Source: Octopus bimaculoides
Taxonomy: Eukaryota
Reading direction: 5' to 3'
Assembly: GCF_001194135.2 (NCBI RefSeq)
Contig: NC_068984.1
Coordinates: forward strand, 1,052,456-1,089,091
DNA: 36,636 nucleotides
This document shows positions 9,466 through 36,107 of this stretch, in pieces. The position numbers were made by a program, and so were the translations under genes. The notes below the pieces were generated by a model. The model worked only from the letters and a program-made list of their open reading frames with translations. It was not told the origin of the DNA and ran no database searches. How positions within the stretch are numbered: position 1 is the first letter of the stretch; the number at the start of each line of letters is the position of its first letter.

Positions 9466-9512
9466 ATCATTATTATCATAATAGTTGTTGTTGCTATCTA
9501 CTTTTAATCTTT

Positions 9513-10592
9513 ATTTTTGTTGCAACCATTTGCCGAGGGGACATACCCAGCGCCCTAGGGTAAGTGAAGGATAAGAGATGTTACAGTATGACTGAAAGCT
9601 TGAGGAGGGGAAGTGGCAGGGACAGTAGCGAAATATCTTCATGTAATACAACACAGGCATTTAAATGGATAGGGTTTTTCTAATGATGTGGTGAGTACTT
9701 GTCAGCACAATCTTTTGGATTTCTCTGTGACATGGCTCACCAAGGATATTATCTAGATGTTTCTGACATCCCTTTCTTATCATACCTAGGGCACCCGCAA
9801 TAACAGGAACAGTTCTCGCTTTAAGATGCCACATCTTTTGGATTTCAATTTCCTGTTCCTTATATTTACTTAGTTTGTCAAATTTCTTTACAGATATATT
9901 CTTATCAGTGGGAACACTTACATCTATTAGTCTACAAGTATTTTCTTCTCCATCTTTAATGATTATGTCTGGTCGATTAGCTTGGATCGTTCTGTTAGTG
10001 TTGACTGGAAAATCTCAGGGGATAGTGAAATTTTTACCTTCAACGACTGGCTCAGGATGATGTTTATACCAGTAAGCAGGAGTGCTGATTTTGTAGTGTT
10101 AACATATTTTCCAATGTAAATACTGTTCTGCCCCATCGTGGCGATTTTTGTATTCGTTTGGTGTCAGCAGAGGACATCCTGAGATGAGATGGTCTATTGT
10201 TTCGTCGAATGTGTCGCTGAATCTGCATTTAGGGTCAGAACCGTTTTGAAGAATGTTAGCCAGGTAGTTTTTTGTGAGCAAGCTTTGATCTCGTGCCGCC
10301 AATATGAGTCTCTGCTTTCAGTCTTGAACTTCTCAGCCACTGATGGGTTGTTGCTTGGTCTACATCAACATTTCGACTTCGAAGTAAATACTGTCCATGC
10401 AGAGACTTCTAGCTCTATCGCTCCTCAATTTTGTTTCTGCCCGTTCTTTTTTGCCGTCCGTTTGATCCGTTTTGTTTGTTTTATGGCAGTGGTTTCAGGT
10501 TCTTCATCTAATTCAGGATTAATGCCAAGTTCCCTTGCAAATTTGCAAGCTTCCTTGACAATAGAATGAGATTTTTGGCTGCTTTCGGGAAC
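9513..10592 (-). mobile_element. R4/Dong-type LINE, 3' fragment of a second subfamily
   Basis: AARDQSLLTKNY...KCRFSDTFDETIDHLISGCPLL...RHD...LHWKIC (10099-10302), then a QANRPDI-type RLE region and 3' UTR. Confidence 0.88.
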
Positions 10593-14990: not shown

Positions 14991-15222
14991 GGTGGTGAGT
15001 AGGCAGAATCATTAGCACACCGGGCAAATGCATGGCGGTATTTCGTCCGTCTTTACGTTCTGAGTTCAAATACCGCCGAAGTTGACTTTGCCTTTCATCC
15101 TTCCATAGTCAATAAGTTAAGTCCCAATCAAATACTGGGGACGGTGGGATCCACTCAACCCCTCCCCAAAAATTTCAAGCTTTGTGCTTTTAGTAGAAAA
15201 GATTATTATTATTATCATTATT
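14991..15222 (+). mobile_element. tRNA-derived SINE with (ATT)n tail
   Basis: ggcagaatcattagc...gttctgagttcaaat (B-box-like)...gactttgcctttcatcc...tagtagaaaagattattatt. Confidence 0.85.
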
Positions 15223-15383: not shown

Positions 15384-15900
15384 GTTTGACTTTCGTTTTG
15401 TATTTGTACATGTATCCCATATCTAGTCAGCAACTTCTTTGTCTTTCTGTCTAAACTGTTCACTTCGTCTACTGTCCATGCGGTTACCCCTGCTCCATAT
15501 CTAAGGAGTGAAGCCGCCCAAGTGTTGATAGCTTCAATCTTATTCAGTCCGTTTAATTTCGACTTAAGAATCAGTCTCAGTCTGCGCAAGTACTCCACCT
15601 TAAATTTTTCTCTCATTTCTTTCTCCATCAACCTATCCATCTCCAATATCCCCAAGTACTTGTAGCCCGTCTCTTCTATCTGCTTCATAACCGTCCCCAA
15701 CAGTACCTTACATTTAATCTGCATGTTTGTTACAATCACTTTCCGGGGACACACACCCAGCGTCCTGGGGTGAGTGAACGATAAAAGATGCTACAGTATG
15801 GCTGAAAGCTTGGGAAGAAGAAGTGGAAGGTGCAGTAGTGAAATATCTTCATGTAATAAAATACAGACGTTTAAATTGATGGGGTTTTTCTAAGAATGTG
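15382..15900 (-). mobile_element. Chimeric R4/Dong fragments (3' UTR + internal RT piece + ~30-bp 3' terminus)
   Basis: 15713-15900 matches the 9513-9700 UTR. 15412-15705 encodes YKYLGILE...EYLRRLRLILKSKLNG. 15382-15411 matches the terminus at 10635 and 35910. Confidence 0.8.
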
Positions 15901-15934
15901 GGCAGGAAGTGGATTAAGGCAGGAAGTGGATTAA
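15901..15934. repeat. 17-bp exact tandem duplication
   Basis: ggcaggaagtggattaa x2. Confidence 0.95.
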
Positions 15935-16149: not shown

Positions 16150-17322
16150 GCAAATTTCTACTGCATCACCTGTTACCCCCTCCGTGTTGCTGGGATGCGT
16201 GTGTACAGCATTGTGTGTTCTTGTTTTTCTTCTTTCTGAGAATGTGAAAACTCTTCCTGGTATTGTATTGCATCAGTTTGTTCTGCTATGGGGTTTCATA
16301 GCAGTCATTTGTTGTATTAATGTTGTGTTGTGTGTGTAATGCGAGTTGTGTTCATTTGTTGAGTATCTGACCTGCAGGGGGTTGTATATTTATTTTGGGG
16401 GTGAGGTGGATATATGCCATATAGAGTGAGTCTTGTGTTTCTGGATTGTTTTACTTGAGTTGTTTTATTGAGTTAATAGTGTCTTGCACAGGATGTGGCC
16501 TGTTCCTAGCAGGGTTATCTATTGGACAGTGTGCAATGTTGAAGCTCCGGGTATAGCGTCTACGTTTTTGTGTCATATGTTTTTTTTTTTTTATGATGCC
16601 CAATGCTCGAATTATCATTGGTTTTCGCCTTCATGCCCCACATCTTGAATACTTCAATTTCGAGGTCACTGTACTTTGACAATTTCTCCACTTCTTTTTG
16701 AGCAATACTTTGGTCAGAAGGAATTGCAATGTCTATCAATAAGCCGGTATTTGGTTTTTTCCAATCCTTGATTATTATGTCTGGTTGATTAGCTTTTATT
16801 TCTTTGTCCATTTGAATAGGCATATCCCAGATGATTGTGGCTTGGTCATTGTCTCATACTTTGTTCGGTACATTCTTATACCATTTATAGTTAGTGTTTA
16901 TGTTGTAGTGCTGGCATATTGTCCAGTGGATATAACTACTTACTCGGTTGTGTCTTTATATATATTCAGATTTGGCGAGTTCTGGACAGCCAGAGACTGA
17001 TGTCGCCAACTGTCTCATTATGCTGGTTGCGCATTCTGCATTTGGTGTTGGGGCCTGTTTTCCTTATTTAGCCTTTATAGTTGTTTGTGGTCAGGCATTG
17101 GTCTTGTGCAGCGAAAATCACTCCTTCCGTTTCTGTTTTTTAATTCACAGCTTTTGAGTCACTTTTCTTGCAGTCTTGAGTCACTTCTCTAAATGTCTTG
17201 AGTCACTTCTCTAAATGTCTTGAGTCACTTCTCTAAATGTCTTGAGTCACTTCTCTAAATGCCTTGCAGGCTTTTAGCCATGGAGTGATTTTTCTCTCCA
17301 TTCGTTCTTTAGTATGTTTTGT
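16150..17322 (-). mobile_element. R4/Dong-type LINE, 3' fragment
   Basis: IIWDMPIQMDKEIKANQPDIIIKD...LIDIAIPSD...EKLSKYSDLEIEVFKMWG (16560-16823), with upstream GVIFAAQDQ and KCRMCN. Confidence 0.88.
17173..17260. repeat. 22-bp minisatellite (GTCTTGAGTCACTTCTCTAAAT) x4 inside a LINE
   Basis: Exact units at 17173, 17195, 17217 and 17239. Confidence 0.97.
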
Positions 17323-17324
17323 AT

Positions 17325-17535
17325 TGGCAGAATCGTTAGCATGCCGGACCAAATGCTAAACGGTATTTCAACCGTCACTACGTTCTGAGTTCAAATTCTA
17401 CCGAGGTCGACTTTGCCTTTCATCCTTTCGGGGTCGATAAATTAAGTACCAGTGAAACATTGGGGTCGATGTAATCGACTAATCCCTTCCCGCCAAATTT
17501 CAGGACTTGTACTTTTAGTAGAAAGGATTATTACT
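17325..17535 (+). mobile_element. tRNA-derived SINE
   Basis: tggcagaatcgttagc...gttctgagttcaaattc...gaggtcgactttgcctttcatcctttcggggtcgataaattaagtacc...gaaaggattatt. Confidence 0.88.
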
Positions 17536-17786: not shown

Positions 17787-17866
17787 TAATTATGTTTATC
17801 CTGATTAATTATGTTTATCCTGATTAATTATGTTTATCCTGATTAATTATGTTTATCCTGATTAAT
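17787..17866. repeat. 19-bp minisatellite (TAATTATGTTTATCCTGAT) x4
   Basis: Exact units at 17787, 17806, 17825 and 17844. Confidence 0.97.
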
Positions 17867-19767: not shown

Positions 19768-22540
19768 TTATACATCGTCGCCACAGTTGTCCAGAGCCTC
19801 TTTGAACAGGGGAGTGGTGAGCAGTTGAATGACATCTTGTGGTAGCTTGTTCCACGGGGCTGCGATACGAACGGAGAATGCGGCCTTCCACCTGTTGATT
19901 TGAAAGTGTTGGGCATAGAGTTTGCGATCTTGCCCACGAAGACCCCTATCCGGCGTAGGGGTGAAAAACTCTGCAAATGGTAGGTTTACATTCCCGTTGA
20001 AGATATTGAAAACCAGGATGAAATCTCTCCGCATCCTCCGTCGTTCAAGTGAAGGTAATGCCACCCGTTGGAGACGTTCCTCATCCGTAAGCTTTGATAA
20101 TCACGTGACCATTTGGGTGGCTAAGTGCTGAAACCGTTTCAGGTGCTGAAAGTCTTTCTGGGGATATGGATTTGAGGCCTGGATGCAATATTCGAGGATA
20201 GGTCGAACTAGAGTAACATATAAAGGTCGAAAGACATCCATTGAAAAGTTGACAACGGACCGGTGGATGAGGAAAGGATTCCCTCTGGCTTTGTTCGCCG
20301 CCTCGATACCCTGCCGTGTTGGCTTGAAAATAGTATCAATCATTATTATGCCGAGATCCTTTTCTTCGGTGACCATCTAAATATGTTGGTGTTGGAGGCC
20401 AATAGTCAAGGGAGAGTTTGGAGGTGAACCTATTGGCAAATGGCTGCATTTTGAGGCGTTCAAGGGCAGATCCCATTCTTCCGCCCAATTCCAAGTTCGG
20501 TTCAGCGACGATTGGAGTAGGTCGTATTGATTCCTAGGCGAGACAAGTTTGATGTCGTCTGCAAATAGGAGGACTTTTCCATCAAGGAAATCTGGCCGGT
20601 CGTTGATATAGAGAAGGAAAAGTATTGGCCCCAGCACCGACCCCTGGGGAACGTAACTGCAGGCATTTGTCTTCGTGGAGAGATTTCCATTTATCTGCAC
20701 CCGAAAAGTTCGACGGCTCAGGAAGGAAGAAATCCACGAAGTCACCAGTGGGTGAATCTTGTATGCTTGAAGTTTGTGCAAGAAAAGTCCGTGATTAACG
20801 GGAGTCAAACGCCTTTGCAAAGTCCAAAAATACCACGTCCACCGTGTCTTTTTCATCCATGGCCCATGTAATCCACTCTTCAAGAAGGAAAAGATTTGTT
20901 AAGCAAGATCTTCGGGGTAGAAGTCCATTCTGCCAGTCGGAGATGGTTCATGAGAGATTTCTTGCCGATAGTCTCCATAACTTTGCAGAGGATGGACATC
21001 AGACTGACCGGTCGATAAGTAAGGGGGCCTTCTTTACTGCCCTTTTTAAATATTGGACATACGGTCGCTTTCCTCCAGTCTTCCGGTACAGTTCTTTGCT
21101 CGCTCAAGTGAAAGATTGAAAAGAGATGCCAGAGGAGCCGCCAGGATACAAGCTAGGACACGTAGAACAGCTGGATGGAGACTATATGGGCCGACGCTTT
21201 TGTCTCGATGAAGTTTTGAAAGGATAATATAGATTGCATGAGGTGAGATTGTGACTGGAGGTATCGGTTCGATTTGCCTGTCTGATATCAGTGACTCACG
21301 CCCATCATCTTTTCGGTAAATAGAAGAGAACATTGCAACAAAGAGTGGACTTTGTGAGGTGGAGTCTGTGACAATATTTCCTTCGACATCTCTCAGCGCA
21401 ACCACTCGATTATTCAGTCGTTTGTTTCGTTGAACTTGTGCTTAAAATCTTTTGGGGTTAGATTTTGCCTGTGATGCAAGATTGCGTTCGAATACACCAC
21501 GTGCCCGTCGGACCATACGTTCCGCCCTATTTCTTTGATTTCTGTAGATTTCGAAAGCAGCTGTAGTTCTACATCTCGTATATTCGTACCAAGCGCTATC
21601 TCTTAACCTCCATTCTCGTTTCACATTGCTGGATATCCAGGGTTTGTGTCTTTGTTTTCGAGGGAGAGGCACTTTCAGTCACCCTCATAATCGAGTTCTT
21701 GATCGCTTGCCATCGCTTTTCCACTCTCAGTATTGCCATTACTTCGTCCCAATCACAATTCTGAGCTGCATCTACAAGGGCGTTCTCGTCCATTGCATGG
21801 AACTTTCGTCTTGGTGCTGGAACTGGTATTGGAGAAGGGATTGACGATGCACATTGAATGTTAGAACCATGTGATCACTTTTACCCAAGGGTGGTAGGAT
21901 CTTCACATCAGAGATAGTTGTCGGGTACTTTGAGAAGACAAGGTCAAGTGTTGATGGCTGTTACGTATTTCAAAACTTCGTTGGTATAGAAATATGTTGG
22001 ATAAGGAATAGATTTTCAGCAGTGTGCAGCAAGGTTTGATAGAAACGAGCTCCTGTTGGGCAGAAATACGTCTCCCAGTCAATCAGCGGTGCATTGAAGT
22101 CACCAGCTATTAGACAATCTGCTTGAGATTTTGATATTTCAGCTATTGCGTTTAGAAGCCGTCGGCCATCTTCAGGTTCCACCTGTGGGCTGCGATACAC
22201 GGACAGAATGGGAAAGCTGCCTTTTACAAGTCAAATTTTGCACAGGGCGGCATTGAAATAGCCTGATGGTTGCGCATTTGGTGGGAGCTCATGCTGACAG
22301 GGCTTTAGATCTATTTTAATGAACATCACAACGCCACCTCCACGAAAACCGACTCTGTTACATCGGAACGTCATGTAACTCTCAATTGAAAATTCAGCAT
22401 CTTGAATATCAGCATGCTGCCAACTCTCTGTAACGATCGCAAAAATTTGGCTTCACTTTGATAACAAGCACTCGAAATTCATCTAACTTTGCCAAACGTG
22501 AGCAGATGTTGGTCTAGAAAACTCGAAGAGCGTGGTGATG
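19768..22540 (-). pseudogene. CR1 ORF2 (APE endonuclease + reverse transcriptase), frameshifted
   Basis: VYRSP, IAGDFN, GKSDH; PEDWRKATVCPIFKKG, YRPVSL, FLDFAKAFD, VPQGSVLGPILFLLYIND, LFADDIKL, EKDLGI, LVRPILEY, LERRRMRRD, PWNKLP. Confidence 0.92.
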
Positions 22541-24916: not shown

Positions 24917-25458
24917 GAGTCGATTTTGCTTTTAATTAAATTGTGGTCGATGAAATATGTATTGGTCATATAATAGAGAAAGGTTCAATCGGTCATACAT
25001 CTCACAAATTTATCAATCTATCTATCTATCTATCTATCTGTCTGTCTGTCTGACTGTCTGTCTGCCTGTCTATCTATCTATCTATCTATCTATCTAGCTA
25101 TCTAGCTATCTATTTGTCTGTCTATCTACTTCTCTCTCTCTCTTTCTCTTTCTCTCTCTTTCTCTCTCTCTCTCCTTCTCTCTCTCTCTCTTTCTCTCTC
25201 TCTCTTTCTCTCTCTCTCTTTCTCTCTCTCTCTCTTTCTTTCTCTCTCTTTCTGTCTCTCTCTCTNNNNNNNNNNNNNNNNNNNNNNNNNNNNNNNNNNN
25301 NNNNNNNNNNNNNNNNNNNNNNNNNNNNNNNNNNNNNNNNNNNNNNNNNNNNNNNNNNNNNNNNNNNNNNNNNNNNNNNNNNNNNNNAGAGAGAGAGAGA
25401 GAGAGAGAGAGAGACGTTAAGTGTGGTGTATGGATAAATAGAGAGAGAGAGAAAGAGA

Positions 25459-25514
<56 letters not shown>

Positions 25515-25599
25515 AACAGAGATAGAAAGAGAGAGAGAAAGAGAGAGAGAAGTAGATAGACAGATAGACACATACACACACAGATAGATAGACAGACAA

Positions 25600-25675
<76 letters not shown>

Positions 25676-25805
25676 GACAGACAGACAGACAGACAGACAG
25701 ATAGATAGATAAATTTGTGAGATGTATGACCGATTGAACCTTTCTCTATTATATGACCAATACATATTTTATCGACCACAATTTAATTAAAAGCAAAATC
25801 GACTC
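24917..25805. repeat. Inverted duplication spanning an N gap (98-bp unique arms plus mirrored microsatellites)
   Basis: 24917-25014 is the reverse complement of 25708-25805 with one mismatch. Confidence 0.95.
25266..25387. other. Assembly gap (122 N)
   Basis: Run of N. Confidence 1.
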
Positions 25806-31960: not shown

Positions 31961-32821
31961 ATACAAACTTCTATGCATATTTATTCATTTGTACATATTT
32001 GTGAGGATTTAATGTGAAATATGAGTTTAAATAAATTGACTCTGTGAGGTGTCTTTAAGTGTACATGATTTATGTATCTATTTATTTTTAACTCGCTCAT
32101 ACGCTTGTCTGTTGGTCTGTCCGTTCCTCCATTATCTGTGTATTTATTCCCCACCTCCTCCATCCATACACAGAGGGAGTGAAAGAGGTGAGTGGAAGAA
32201 ACATCGGGTTCTGAATTCACTTATGCGCATGTCACGATGCTGCTGTTTTCGAGCAGTCCACAAATCGAGTAGGATTTTACAAGTAACTCTACAATAACGC
32301 ATTCCGTCCATGACTACCCCACTTTTTGTTTCAGGCATAGTTGTACCACGAGCCACACATGCCAATATGTTATTTCCTGTTCAGTAATAGCTGTGTCATT
32401 TGAGGGAGATGTGGCTCTTATTTCTAACAAATACATTACTAACCCTTCGTGCAGCCTTCCGTTATTGGTCATTAGGTTCCTTTTATATGTAGTAGGTCCC
32501 TTGTCAAGTTACGTCTGTGGCTTCTAAGCTACGATGTGTGTACACTTCAAAAGCAAGTATAGTGTGTTATTTTTAAGATGAACTCTCTACAGTTGCAGCA
32601 ACCGAGCGAGTCATTAATATAATGGCGCACTTGATTAATAAATCAAAAATCATGTGACGAAAGAAAATAACTTTGATGGGATGTTGCCAATTTAATGTGG
32701 CAGTTCCATGAAAGGGAAGAATGCTACTGCTATTTAGCCCTAAAAAACACCGTTTCCAATTGGCCATGACACATTTTCTATGTCCTTATGTTTCCAAAGG
32801 GGGAGATAAGCACCTCCACCC

Positions 32822-32893
32822 AGCAAAGCCAGCATCCAGAGATTAGTTTCACAGTCATTGCTCATCATCAGTCTGGAGTAGCATGGCTTGTTA
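32822..32893 (-). ncRNA. Type I hammerhead ribozyme motif (copy 2, more degenerate)
   Basis: Minus strand reads CCAGA-CUGAUGA-UGAGCAAUGACUGU-GAA-ACUAAU-C-UCUGG-AU-GC-UGGCUUUGCU. Stem I is intact; stem II and the stem III palindrome each carry a substitution. Confidence 0.7.
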
Positions 32894-33119
32894 GCTGTCG
32901 ATGCTTATTTGCCTTTGAAAACATATAGATTTGCAGTAGCATTCTTCCCTTTCATGGGACTGCCACATTAAGTTGGCAATATATCATCACTTTATTGTAC
33001 TGCAGCTGTATAGATCTCTCTGAGAGATTTAGAAATGTAACATTTCTATTTTCAAAAACCAGTGAATGTATTTCACTTGAAATATATATGTTTTCAAAGA
33101 CGAATAAGCATCGACAGCT

Positions 33120-33190
33120 AGCAAACCATGCTACGCCAGACTGATGATGAGCAATGACTCTGAAACTAGTCTCTGGATGCTGGCTTTGCT
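33120..33190 (+). ncRNA. Type I hammerhead ribozyme motif (copy 1)
   Basis: CCAGA(33136-40)-CUGAUGA(33141-47)-U-GAG/CAAUGA/CUC-U-GAA(33162-64)-ACUAGU(palindrome, 33165-70)-C17(33171)-UCUGG(33172-76). Stem I extends through an internal loop into AGCAAACCA/UGGCUUUGCU. The first position of stem II is a non-canonical U.U. Confidence 0.8.
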
Positions 33191-33759
33191 GGGTGGAGGT
33201 GCTTATCTCCACTTTGGAAACATGTGTCATGGCCAACAGGAAACGGTGTTTCCTAGGGCTAAGTAGCATTAGCATTCTTCCCTTTCCTGGAACTTCCACA
33301 TTAAGTTGGCAACATACCATCACTTAGTCGAGCTGCTACTGTATAAATCTCTCTGAAAGATTCAGAAATGTAATGCTTCTATTTTCGAAAATAACTTATC
33401 TCAGTTGTTTATTTTTTTGTAGGTACAATACAGATATTGATGCAGGAGGGGGGGAGGGGCAAGGTAATGTGATTATGTGAGATTATGCCTTTAGGGAGTT
33501 GAAAGGCTGCGGTGACACAAAAACAAATGGTAGCCAAGTAGTTTAATTTAACCAATTTTATACCGCAGCATGATCACGTGACCAGCTACAAATACCAGAC
33601 AAATCACCCTTCAATTACAAATTACCGTCTTAATGAAAGAAAGTATACACCTCACACGTAACGACGTGATGGTCATGGCTGGAATTCGGCTCGTAATATG
33701 TCTGCTTGATAAGGGCTGATTTGGACAAACGCAACAAGAACGATAATAAAAGTACATGT

Positions 33760-33879: not shown

Positions 33880-33950
<71 letters not shown>

Positions 33951-35287: not shown

Positions 35288-35853
35288 NNNNNNNNNNNNN
35301 NNNNNNNNNNNNNNNNNNNNNNNNNNNNNNNNNNNNNNNNNNNNNNNNNNNNNNNNNNNNNNNNNNNNNNNNNNNNNNNNNNNNNNNNNNNNNNNNNNNN
35401 NNNNNNNNNNNNNNNNNNNNNNNNNNNNNNNNNNNNNNNNNNNNNNNNNNNNNNNNNNNNNNNNNNNNNNNNNNNNNNNNNNNNNNNNNNNNNNNNNNNN
35501 NNNNNNNNNNNNNNNNNNNNNNNNNNNNNNNNNNNNNNNNNNNNNNNNNNNNNNNNNNNNNNNNNNNNNNNNNNNNNNNNNNNNNNNNNNNNNNNNNNNN
35601 NNNNNNNNNNNNNNNNNNNNNNNNNNNNNNNNNNNNNNNNNNNNNNNNNNNNNNNNNNNNNNNNNNNNNNNNNNNNNNNNNNNNNNNNNNNNNNNNNNNN
35701 NNNNNNNNNNNNNNNNNNNNNNNNNNNNNNNNNNNNNNNNNNNNNNNNNNNNNNNNNNNNNNNNNNNNNNNNNNNNNNNNNNNNNNNNNNNNNNNNNNNN
35801 NNNNNNNNNNNNNNNNNNNNNNNNNNNNNNNNNNNNNNNNNNNNNNNNNNNNN
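35288..35853. other. Assembly gap (566 N)
   Basis: Run of N. Confidence 1.
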
Positions 35854-35891
<38 letters not shown>

Positions 35892-35909
35892 GTTATTATT
35901 ATTATTATT

Positions 35910-36107
35910 TGTATGACTTTTGCTTTGTATTTGTACAAGTTGGCTCCAAGTCTCACACAGAGACCTCAAGAGACAACAAGTTAGAAGTTCATGCTGGTGT
36001 TATGCCTAGGGTGTCATATATTTAGTTTTGTACATAGTATTGTTCTAGAGAATGTTTAAGAAAACATAAGAAAAATATGAGTTTGTTTTAAAATTTGAGA
36101 TTACATA
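35910..36107 (-). mobile_element. R4/Dong LINE 3' UTR with (AAT)n tail running into the gap
   Basis: High identity to 10635-10835; tail at 35854-35909. Confidence 0.85.

What the first reader, a model, noticed from the sequence alone, without database searches (positions are those of the whole stretch)
33120..33190. Type I hammerhead ribozyme with palindromic stem III and extended stem I
Seen: CUGAUGA and GAAA core nucleotides, a GUC cleavage triplet (predicted cut after 33171), a perfect 5-bp stem I, stem II with a CAAUGA loop, and an ACUAGU palindrome. The two copies each lost a different base, and their consensus gives a perfect 10-bp distal helix AGCAAAGCCA/UGGCUUUGCU. Known: Schistosoma Sm-alpha type I hammerheads have a CCAG/CUGG stem I with an internal loop docking on a 6-nt loop II, and palindromic stem III lets animal type I motifs fold as dimers. 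Caveat: position 10.1-11.1 is U.U instead of G-C, so activity is uncertain.
Basis: partly seen in the sequence, partly recalled or inferred. Interest (0 to 1): 0.85.

Follow-up and report, generated by a model that had tools for sequence, protein, structure and literature searches.

The report
Fossil hammerhead ribozyme in retroelement insertion
The flagged sequence is a real hammerhead-class self-cleaving RNA motif, but it sits in an old, decayed copy of a small non-coding retroelement of a kind already well known in animal genomes, so it is a fairly ordinary find.

Summary
CCAGA/UCUGG forms stem I, followed by CUGAUGA, a 3-bp stem II with a U.U pair and a CAAUGA loop, GAAA, the ACUAGU palindrome and GUC. 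The predicted cut is 33171|33172.

A hammerhead descriptor finds it once in the window and never in 400 simulated windows. Rfam's type I model does not report it, but a canonical control hammerhead also fails that model's threshold.

Context supports a hammerhead origin:
- The motif caps a 53-bp RNA rod that folds only on the hammerhead-sense strand (z -6.8, against -1.7 for the antisense).
- The 713-bp locus (32674-33386) is one insertion flanked by a perfect 11-bp target-site duplication.
- The insertion is an inverted 0.75-unit copy followed by 1.4 direct units of a 333-bp repeat. This is the tandem/inverted signature of Penelope-like elements and animal retrozymes.

U10.1.U11.1 is a published natural variant, and U.U is reported as the best-tolerated mismatch there.

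The copies differ by 8-16%. The minus-strand copy has two pair-breaking changes, and a read-through transcript would bury the ribozyme in dsRNA.

No further family members were found and activity is untested. Verdict: a new member of a known kind, of low to moderate interest.

The parts
32663..32673 (.). Left target-site duplication GAAAATAACTT
   Evidence: This 11-mer occurs exactly twice in the window, abutting both ends of the insertion. 0.04 occurrences are expected by chance.
32674..32932 (-). Inverted partial copy of the unit (segment A plus the first 57 nt of segment B, about 0.75 unit)
   Evidence: Aligns to 33080-33322 as a reverse complement: 92% identity over 243 ungapped columns plus 16 gap columns.
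32836..32876 (-). Degenerate second hammerhead copy. The core is intact, but stem II is broken (CUG for CUC), stem III is broken (ACUAAU), and the triplet is AUC.
   Evidence: The notional cut would be 32841|32840 on the minus strand.
32933..33058 (+). Segment B1: upstream partial tandem copy (pLTR-like)
   Evidence: Direct repeat of 33266-33391 at a spacing of 333 bp, 84% identity.
33059..33386 (+). One complete unit in direct orientation (16-nt linker, segment A with the hammerhead, segment B2)
   Evidence: Period 333. It ends at the right TSD. GC of the insertion is 40.7%.
33084..33227 (+). Imperfect RNA rod (53 pairs, 6 of them G.U) that extends stem I and carries the hammerhead at its tip
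   Evidence: Folding 33075-33232: + strand MFE -60.0 kcal/mol, z -6.76, 0/200 shuffles as stable; antisense -38.1, z -1.74. The second copy shows the same asymmetry.
33120..33128 (+). 5' strand of the distal stem I helix (AGCAAACCA)
   Evidence: Pairs with 33181-33190 in the MFE fold. It differs from the other copy by substitutions at 33121 and 33125.
33136..33140 (+). Stem I 5' strand, CCAGA
   Evidence: Perfect 5 bp with 33172-33176.
33141..33147 (+). Core C3-A9, CUGAUGA
   Evidence: Identical in both copies.
33148..33161 (+). Stem II: U10.1.U11.1, then GAG/CUC (3 bp), with 6-nt loop CAAUGA
   Evidence: The U.U is shared by both copies, so it predates the insertion.
33162..33171 (+). G12 A13 A14; the ACUAGU palindrome (stem III: 1 bp plus a 4-nt loop in cis, 6 bp between two copies); C17. 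Predicted cleavage between 33171 and 33172.
   Evidence: Intermolecular ACUAGU duplex -6.2 kcal/mol.
33172..33176 (+). Stem I 3' strand, UCUGG
33181..33190 (+). 3' strand of the distal stem I helix (UGGCUUUGCU)
   Evidence: Identical in both copies.
33387..33397 (.). Right target-site duplication GAAAATAACTT

Best explanation
The motif is a genuine hammerhead-class (type I, dimer-dependent) ribozyme sequence. It is carried by a non-coding retroelement unit of about 333 nt, of the animal non-LTR retrozyme kind, mobilised by Penelope-like-element (PLE) machinery.

Shown:
- The locus 32674-33386 is one insertion bounded by an 11-bp target-site duplication.
- It consists of an inverted 0.75-unit copy followed by 1.4 units in direct orientation.
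- The RNA of hammerhead polarity, and only that strand, folds into a long rod with the hammerhead junction at its tip.
- All 13 invariant core nucleotides are present.

Inferred from the published life cycle of such elements:
- In the source element, oligomeric transcripts paired their palindromic ACUAGU segments to form a double hammerhead and cut after GUC.
- A PLE reverse transcriptase copied the rod-like RNA into the tandem/inverted cDNA now seen here.

This locus is a fossil. The copies have diverged by 8-16%. The minus copy carries two pair-breaking substitutions. The plus copy would be buried in a roughly 250-bp dsRNA hairpin in any read-through transcript.

My estimates: about 0.85 that the motif descends from a real hammerhead; about 0.4 that the plus copy still cleaves in vitro as a dimer; below 0.1 that it acts at this locus in vivo.
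For: Motif and statistics: the relaxed descriptor gives 1 hit in the window and 0 in 400 simulated windows.

TSD: GAAAATAACTT occurs only at 32663-73 and 33387-97.

Architecture: direct period of 333 bp plus an adjacent inverted copy. This matches the published PLE pattern of partial tandems with an inverted 5'-truncated copy at the 5' end (PMC8557442), and dual hammerheads 100-700 bp apart on opposite strands (PMC4209133).

Retrozyme traits (PMC7229834), each met here: unit of 150-450 bp (333 bp); GC below 50% (40.7%); TSD longer than 4 bp (11 bp); highly self-paired RNA (circular 333-nt monomer -107.9 kcal/mol, z -5.9).

Strand-specific rod: sense z -6.76 and -5.57, against antisense z -1.74 and -1.97.

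Controls: canonical hammerheads with the same stem I and stem III sequences exist in tandem or circular repeats in metagenomes. Their UCUGG strand was not part of the search pattern. The penalty of the hammerhead-compatible monomer fold relative to the MFE is 7.1 kcal/mol here and 7.5-7.9 in those controls.

U10.1-U11.1 occurs in natural hammerheads, and U.U is reported as the best-tolerated mismatch (PMC3088659).
Against: - Rfam RF00163 gives no hit at gathering threshold, or at E<=10 even in an 81-nt search. A canonical control reaches 20.5 bits.
- The most conserved stem pair, G10.1-C11.1, is replaced by U.U, and stem II has only 3 Watson-Crick pairs.
- Only two copies are available. The hammerhead is not better conserved than its surroundings: 2/41 differences against a 7.8% background, P=0.37.
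- Both differences break pairs rather than compensate.
- There are only 1.4 direct units and one hammerhead per strand, so this is not a true tandem array.
- Copy boundaries do not coincide with the cleavage site.
- No PLE reverse transcriptase or GIY-YIG gene is in the window. The only RT belongs to an AP-endonuclease LINE 12 kb away.
- No other family member was found in any collection.
Confidence: 0.5

Rival explanations
1. Same hammerhead origin, different host element. The three pieces are heavily 5'-truncated terminal fragments (pLTR region) of a longer autonomous Penelope-like element, not copies of a dedicated 333-nt non-autonomous retrozyme.
For: PLE insertions are typically strongly 5'-truncated, form partial tandems and carry an adjacent inverted truncated copy. 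Their hammerheads lie in the pLTRs (PMC8557442; PMC4209133). B1 (126 bp) and linker-A-B2 (328 bp) could be two 5'-truncated copies sharing one 3' end. Retrozymes and pLTRs are reported to be homologous in Xenopus (bioRxiv 10.64898/2026.07.22.740005).
Against: The inverted copy lacks the last ~65-70 nt of segment B, so it does not share the 3' end expected from pure 5' truncation. The 5' limits of the inverted copy (about 33075-33080) and of the direct unit (33059) nearly coincide, which suggests a defined unit of about 330 nt. No PLE coding sequence is in the window.
Confidence: 0.3
2. The hammerhead resemblance is a coincidence. The locus is a structured foldback or MITE-like repeat whose hairpin tip happens to spell CUGAUGA...GAAA...UC.
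For: - The motif passes only a relaxed descriptor and is not recognised by Rfam.
- My own rough estimate is about 3e-4 chance hits per window, which means roughly ten chance hits in a gigabase genome.
- The locus has long inverted arms and an 11-bp TSD, a length also produced by some DNA transposons.
Against: - The inverted arms are not terminal. The right arm ends 64 bp before the TSD, and the termini are not inverted repeats.
- A MITE does not explain the internal 333-bp direct repeat.
- The rod is strand-specific at the RNA level, on the same strand as the motif.
- Helix lengths, the 6-nt loop II, the palindromic stem III and the stem I sequence all match the canonical animal type I design (consensus; PMC4209133).
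- The motif lies exactly at the rod tip.
Confidence: 0.07
3. Whatever its origin, the locus now acts as a hairpin-RNA (endo-siRNA) source, because of its ~250-bp inverted arms.
For: A transcript of 32674-33386 is predicted to fold at -444 kcal/mol. In that fold, 224 of the 232 paired right-arm positions pair with the left arm, including 40 of 41 hammerhead positions.
Against: There is no expression data. The arrangement is the expected by-product of PLE-type insertion. The arms are decaying at a neutral-looking rate.
Confidence: 0.05
4. The segment is a C/D-box snoRNA-like element (UGAUGA C box, CUGA D box, terminal stem AGACU/AGUCU).
For: Weak Rfam matches: SNORD109A 16.8 bits and SNORD44 11.8 bits at 33136-33172.
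Against: All matches are far below gathering scores (35-50 bits). They span only about 35 nt of 55-80-nt models, with most of each model deleted and no guide region. The resemblance follows from the hammerhead core (GAUGA...CUGA).
Confidence: 0.01

Closest known systems
Canonical metazoan type I hammerheads (Rfam RF00163: Schistosoma Sm-alpha, newt satellite 2, cave-cricket pDo500)
   Same: - Type I topology.
- CUGAUGA / GAAA / A15.1-U16.1 / GUC core.
- ccag/cugg stem I.
- Helix II of 4 positions closed by a 6-nt loop.
- Very short stem III with a palindromic loop, implying action as a dimer (consensus; PMC4209133).
   Different: - U.U instead of G10.1-C11.1.
- Only 3 Watson-Crick pairs in stem II.
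- One extra A-U pair at the base of stem I.
- Scores below about 9 bits against RF00163, where a canonical control scores 20.5.
Animal non-LTR retrozymes (Cervera & de la Pena 2020, PMC7229834)
   Same: Unit size (333 bp, within 150-450), low GC, TSD longer than 4 bp, a type I hammerhead, and a highly self-paired rod-like RNA.
   Different: Only 1.4 direct units plus an inverted partial copy, rather than a multi-copy tandem array. There is one hammerhead per strand, so no unit-length RNA can be excised from this locus. Expression and circularity are unknown.
Penelope-like element insertions and their pLTR min-hammerheads (Cervera & de la Pena 2014, PMC4209133; Craig et al. 2021, PMC8557442)
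   Same: - A partial tandem plus an adjacent inverted truncated copy.
- Dual hammerheads on opposite strands a few hundred bp apart (295 bp here).
- A short helix I (5 bp).
- A nucleotide between A9 and the first G-C pair of stem II.
- A palindromic 15.2-16.2 region.
   Different: - No RT/GIY-YIG ORF.
- Helix II is 3-4 bp, not 7-8 bp.
- An extra U also lies on the 3' side, before G12.
- The insertion site is not a microsatellite.
Natural U10.1-U11.1 hammerhead variants (Perreault et al. 2011, PMC3088659)
   Same: Stem II starts with a U.U mismatch next to an otherwise consensus core.
   Different: That paper reports them in a survey across all domains of life. No sequence relationship to this element has been established.
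Metagenomic hammerhead repeats L001-L003 (found here)
   Same: Identical CCAGA-CUGAUGA...GAAACUAGUC-UCUGG framework. Stem I is extended by an internal loop and a distal helix. The competing monomer fold is the same.
   Different: They have a canonical G10.1-C11.1 GACC/GGUC stem II and units of 727 and 1021 nt. They share no similarity with the window outside the 42-nt hammerhead. They were selected by a pattern taken from the window, so the shared stems are not independent evidence of homology.

Membership tests
Hammerhead ribozyme, type I | Invariant core C3 U4 G5 A6 N7 G8 A9 ... G12 A13 A14 | tested here: met
   CUGAUGA at 33141-47 and GAA at 33162-64. Identical in both copies.
Hammerhead ribozyme, type I | A15.1-U16.1 pair followed by a non-G residue (H17) at the cleavage site | tested here: met
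   A33165-U33170 and C33171 (GUC triplet) in the plus copy. The minus copy has AUC.
Hammerhead ribozyme, type I | Three helices around the core, with stem I open and stems II and III closed | tested here: met
   Stem I is 5 bp and extends into a rod. Stem II is 3 WC bp plus U.U, with a 6-nt loop. Stem III is 1 bp plus a 4-nt loop in cis, and 6 bp (-6.2 kcal/mol) between two copies.
Hammerhead ribozyme, type I | G10.1-C11.1 base pair | tested here: not met
   U33148.U33161 in both copies. This is a published natural variant and the best-tolerated mismatch (PMC3088659), so it weakens membership but does not exclude it.
Hammerhead ribozyme, type I | Score at or above the Rfam RF00163 gathering threshold (34 bits) | tested here: not met
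   No Hammerhead_1 match at gathering or at E<=10. The test is weak for this subclass: a canonical control (L002) reaches only 20.5 bits.
Hammerhead ribozyme, type I | Core conserved and stems covarying across family members | tested here: inconclusive
   Only two copies are available. All 13 core positions are identical, but that is expected by chance (0.92^13 is about 0.34). There are 2/41 differences against a 7.8% background, P=0.37, and both break pairs. No other members were found.
Hammerhead ribozyme, type I | Site-specific self-cleavage | not testable with these tools
   Needs in vitro transcription of monomer and dimer constructs.
Animal non-LTR retrozyme | Tandem repeats of 150-450 bp, each with a type I hammerhead | tested here: inconclusive
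   The period is 333 bp, but there are only 1.4 direct units and a single sense hammerhead, plus an inverted 0.75 unit.
Animal non-LTR retrozyme | Low GC (<50%), TSD longer than 4 bp, no LTR/PBS/PPT and no coding capacity | tested here: met
   GC is 40.7%. The TSD is 11 bp. The longest ORF (123 aa) has no homologue among 5.8 billion proteins. PBS and PPT were not specifically searched.
Animal non-LTR retrozyme | Highly self-paired unit-length RNA | tested here: met
   The circular 333-nt monomer folds at -107.9 kcal/mol, z -5.9. The rod has z -6.76 on the sense strand only.
Animal non-LTR retrozyme | Expressed as linear and circular RNA | not testable with these tools
   No transcriptome of the source organism is available.
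Penelope-like element (autonomous) | ORF with a telomerase-like RT and a GIY-YIG endonuclease | tested here: not met
   The 713-bp insertion has no such ORF. The only RT in the window (20377-20883, RVT_1, E 2.5e-16) lies in an AP-endonuclease LINE remnant. Not every ORF in the window was scanned.
Penelope-like element (insertion architecture) | Partial tandem (pLTR) plus an inverted 5'-truncated copy adjacent at the 5' end, with a hammerhead in the repeat | tested here: met
   Inverted copy at 32674-32932, then B1-linker-A-B2 at 32933-33386, all inside one TSD. Compare PMC8557442.
C/D-box snoRNA | Rfam gathering score, and C/D boxes flanking a guide region in a 60-90-nt RNA | tested here: not met
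   The best match is 16.8 bits against a threshold of 35. Only 35 nt are matched, with most of the model deleted.

The most novel reading that the evidence does not exclude
The 333-nt unit represents a live family in the source genome: a retrozyme whose hammerhead works with U10.1.U11.1 and a 3-bp stem II as its normal, selected state. This locus, with inverted plus tandem copies inside a single 11-bp TSD, would then be a clean single-event footprint showing that retrozyme RNA is integrated by the Penelope-type mechanism.
Probability: 0.2. Interest if true: 0.45.

Novelty: new member of a known kind. Interest (0 to 1): 0.3.

Why it matters
Hammerhead-bearing retrozymes and Penelope-like elements are abundant in animal genomes but poorly annotated, so recognising this locus correctly improves repeat annotation. 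It prevents the region from being misread as a snoRNA, a MITE or a functional ribozyme gene.

The locus is a tidy example of a complex tandem/inverted insertion bounded by one target-site duplication. That supports the proposal that animal retrozymes are mobilised by PLE machinery.

If the family proves active, it would add an animal example of the rare U10.1.U11.1 core-adjacent variant. It does not open a new question about ribozymes.

Tried and rejected
- **Rfam.** I searched at gathering threshold over the whole window, and at E<=10 over 901 nt and 81 nt. No hammerhead family was reported, only sub-threshold C/D snoRNA look-alikes, which I rejected. A control search showed the Rfam model is insensitive to this dimer-type subclass, so the negative result carries little weight.
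- **Protein-space route to related repeats.** The 123-aa ORF across the repeat has no homologue.
- **Exact-protein look-ups** of two window ORFs, to identify the source genome. Neither is on record, so the organism remains unidentified.
- **Viral-contig scan** for the U.U variant. The 13 hits are all one phage coding sequence (P-D-D-E-F-G-F-S-E-T) with no stems I or III. Irrelevant.
- **Genome-contig scan**. No hits.
- **Literature search** for the motif sequence in full texts and in one supplement. No hits.
- **BLAST of the element against L001-L003**. No similarity beyond the 42-nt hammerhead.
- **MITE/foldback reading.** Rejected because the inverted arms are not terminal and a direct repeat is present.
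- **First shuffle script**. It timed out because of N runs in the window. I replaced it with a Markov simulation.

Full report
**1. The observation**

Reading the plus strand gives the following. Stem I is CCAGA (33136-40) paired with UCUGG (33172-76). CUGAUGA is at 33141-47. Stem II is U33148, then GAG (33149-51), loop CAAUGA (33152-57), CUC (33158-60) and U33161. GAAA is at 33162-65 and the ACUAGU palindrome at 33165-70. C17 is 33171, so the predicted cut lies between 33171 and 33172.

A descriptor script found exactly this site and nothing else in the window. The descriptor required stem I of at least 3-5 bp, CUGANGA, stem II of at least 3 bp beyond position 10.1/11.1, GAAA, A15.1-U16.1 plus one further pair, and H17. 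It found the site only when a mismatch at 10.1/11.1 was allowed. It gave 0 hits in 400 first-order Markov windows of the same composition.

My own rough analytic estimate is about 3e-4 chance hits per window. That would mean roughly ten in a gigabase genome, so the motif alone is not decisive at genome scale and context matters.

One sub-claim is wrong. The two copies are collinear in the distal helix. They differ by two substitutions (33121 G/A, 33125 A/G), not by two single-base losses. The simplest ancestor, AGCAAGCCA, pairs with UGGCUUUGCU as 9 bp plus a bulged U.

**2. Curated models**

Rfam reports no family at gathering threshold. It reports no hammerhead family at E<=10 in a 901-nt or an 81-nt search.

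As a control I used a textbook type I hammerhead with the same stems I and III (locus L002). It scores 20.5 bits against RF00163 (E 0.0044), which is also below the 34-bit gathering score. In a 4-kb search it was not reported at all.

So the model is insensitive to hammerheads with a one-pair stem III. Even so, the window motif scores at least about 11 bits below the control, as expected from U.U and a 3-bp stem II. The only matches at the site are C/D snoRNA fragments far below threshold (16.8 against 35 bits). These reflect the GAUGA...CUGA letters of the hammerhead core.

**3. The host element**

The motif lies in a compound repeat:
- 32674-32932 is the reverse complement of 33080-33322 (segment A plus the first 57 nt of segment B). 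Identity is 92% over 243 ungapped columns, with 16 gap columns.
- 32933-33058 (B1) is a direct repeat of 33266-33391 (B2) at a spacing of 333 bp, with 84% identity.
- No other copy exists in the window.

The 11-mer GAAAATAACTT occurs exactly twice in the window, at 32663-73 and 33387-97, abutting both ends of the complex. Only 0.04 occurrences are expected. The whole 713-bp structure is therefore one insertion with a target-site duplication.

The layout is an inverted partial copy, then a partial upstream copy, then a complete unit. This is the published signature of Penelope-like-element integration (PMC8557442). Dual hammerheads 100-700 bp apart on opposite strands were described for PLE-derived sequences (PMC4209133). 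Unit length (333 bp), GC (40.7%) and a TSD longer than 4 bp fit the definition of animal non-LTR retrozymes (PMC7229834).

**4. RNA-level structure**

The 158-nt segment 33075-33232 folds on the plus strand to -60.0 kcal/mol (z -6.76, 0 of 200 shuffles as stable). It forms a 53-pair rod with 6 G.U pairs, and the hammerhead core sits at its tip. The antisense strand reaches only -38.1 kcal/mol (z -1.74).

The second copy shows the same asymmetry: hammerhead-sense -61.4 (z -5.57) against antisense -46.8 (z -1.97). A circularised 333-nt monomer folds at -107.9 kcal/mol (z -5.9).

The structure is thus a property of the RNA of hammerhead polarity, not of a DNA palindrome. This is independent support that the element evolved as a structured RNA read in the same sense as the motif.

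**5. Competence of the ribozyme**

Stem III can form only one pair with a 4-nt loop in cis. Between two copies, ACUAGU forms a 6-bp helix (-6.2 kcal/mol). This is the dimer design typical of animal type I hammerheads (PMC4209133).

The monomer MFE sequesters the site in an alternative GACUG/UAGUC helix. The hammerhead-compatible fold is 7.1 kcal/mol less stable than the MFE. The three canonical control hammerheads show the same penalty, 7.5-7.9 kcal/mol, so this does not single out the window motif.

The U.U at 10.1/11.1 is shared by both copies, so it predates the insertion. Perreault et al. report natural hammerheads whose stem II starts with U10.1-U11.1. They note that U.U supported more cleavage than any other mismatch in the classic mutational study (PMC3088659). 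The same residues can also be read as the extra nucleotide after A9 that is conserved in PLE hammerheads, plus an unusual extra U before G12.

Activity is therefore plausible but probably reduced. I put it at about 0.4 for the plus copy as a dimer in vitro.

**6. State of this locus**

The inverted copies differ at 19 of 243 aligned positions, and B1 and B2 differ at 20 of 126. The insertion is old.

The hammerhead carries 2 differences in 41 nt, which is not significantly fewer than the background (P=0.37). Both differences break pairs in the minus copy: C to G in stem II, and G to A in stem III, which also changes the triplet to AUC.

A read-through transcript of 32674-33386 would fold into a long dsRNA hairpin (-444 kcal/mol). 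In it, 40 of 41 hammerhead positions pair with the antisense of the inverted copy. There is one sense hammerhead per strand, so no unit-length RNA can be released from this locus. It is a fossil of the element, not a working gene.

**7. Relatives**

One metagenome scan used the framework CCAGACTGATGA-N(10-20)-GAAACTAGTC. It returned three contigs with four canonical hammerheads. All four continue with UCUGG, which was not in the pattern. They lie in units of 727 and 1021 nt that repeat within the contigs.

These contigs form their own family, 68-84% identical to each other. They share nothing with the window beyond the 42-nt hammerhead. They serve as controls, not as evidence of homology.

All other routes to family members failed: the protein search, the viral and prokaryotic genome scans, and the literature. 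The source organism is unidentified. The window is clearly eukaryotic: it has dense microsatellites, about 37% GC and a decayed AP-endonuclease/RT LINE.

**8. Verdict**

The motif is a real hammerhead-class sequence, with probability about 0.85. It sits in a PLE-type retroelement insertion. The host is most likely a non-autonomous, retrozyme-like 333-nt unit (0.5), or alternatively truncated PLE termini (0.3). A chance origin is unlikely (0.07).

This is a new member of a well-known kind. Type I hammerheads of this design occur in thousands to over a hundred thousand copies in many animal genomes (PMC4209133, PMC7229834). The points of modest interest are the ancestral U.U variant and the clean TSD-bounded tandem/inverted footprint.

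Noticed in passing
L001 (1-1445), L002 (1-1284), L003 (1-1320): Three metagenome contigs form a family of 727-nt (L002) and 1021-nt (L001) units that repeat within the contig, so they are either tandem or assembled from circular RNA/DNA. Each unit has one canonical type I hammerhead with a palindromic ACUAGU stem III. L001 has an extra G between A9 and stem II. They look like larger retrozyme-like or pLTR elements of an unidentified marine eukaryote.
   Followed up: partly
L002:1238-1271: The contig ends in an Illumina TruSeq adapter sequence (GATCGGAAGAGCACACGTCTGAACTCCAGTCAC). This is adapter contamination in a public metagenome assembly.
   Followed up: no
window:19700-22400 (- strand): A decayed non-LTR retrotransposon. 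Fragments of an AP-type endonuclease (LIAGDFNAPLIDW) and an RVT_1 reverse transcriptase (20377-20883, E 2.5e-16) are split over several frames. It is unrelated to the hammerhead element.
   Followed up: partly
window:10597-10836 and 35868-36107; 9499-9691 and 15709-15901; 15002-15208 and 17326-17533: Other dispersed repeat pairs (78-90% identity) within the window. They are not related to the hammerhead element and were not classified.
   Followed up: no
window:24917-25263 and 25440-25805: A roughly 350-bp inverted repeat (86%) made largely of TC/GA-rich and TATC/GATA microsatellite, flanking an assembly gap (N run 25266-25387). A second N run lies at 35288-35853.
   Followed up: no
window:3370-3440 and 33880-33950: Two perfect (ATAG)n arrays with the same copy number (17.8). 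The second lies about 480 bp downstream of the insertion. Microsatellite density is very high throughout the window (60 TRF rows in 36.6 kb).
   Followed up: no
window:11466-11551, 17154-17266, 17787-17866: Three short minisatellites with perfect or near-perfect units: 13-nt ATGCAGCTGGTGG x6.6, a 22-nt unit x5.1, and a 19-nt unit x4.2. Their significance is unknown.
   Followed up: no
L004-L016: The string CTGATGATGAG-N8-CTCTGAAAC is conserved in 13 IMG/VR phage contigs because it encodes the C-terminal end of one protein family (..PDDEFGFSETITEYPDTL*). This shows that hammerhead core letters alone can recur in coding DNA.
   Followed up: yes
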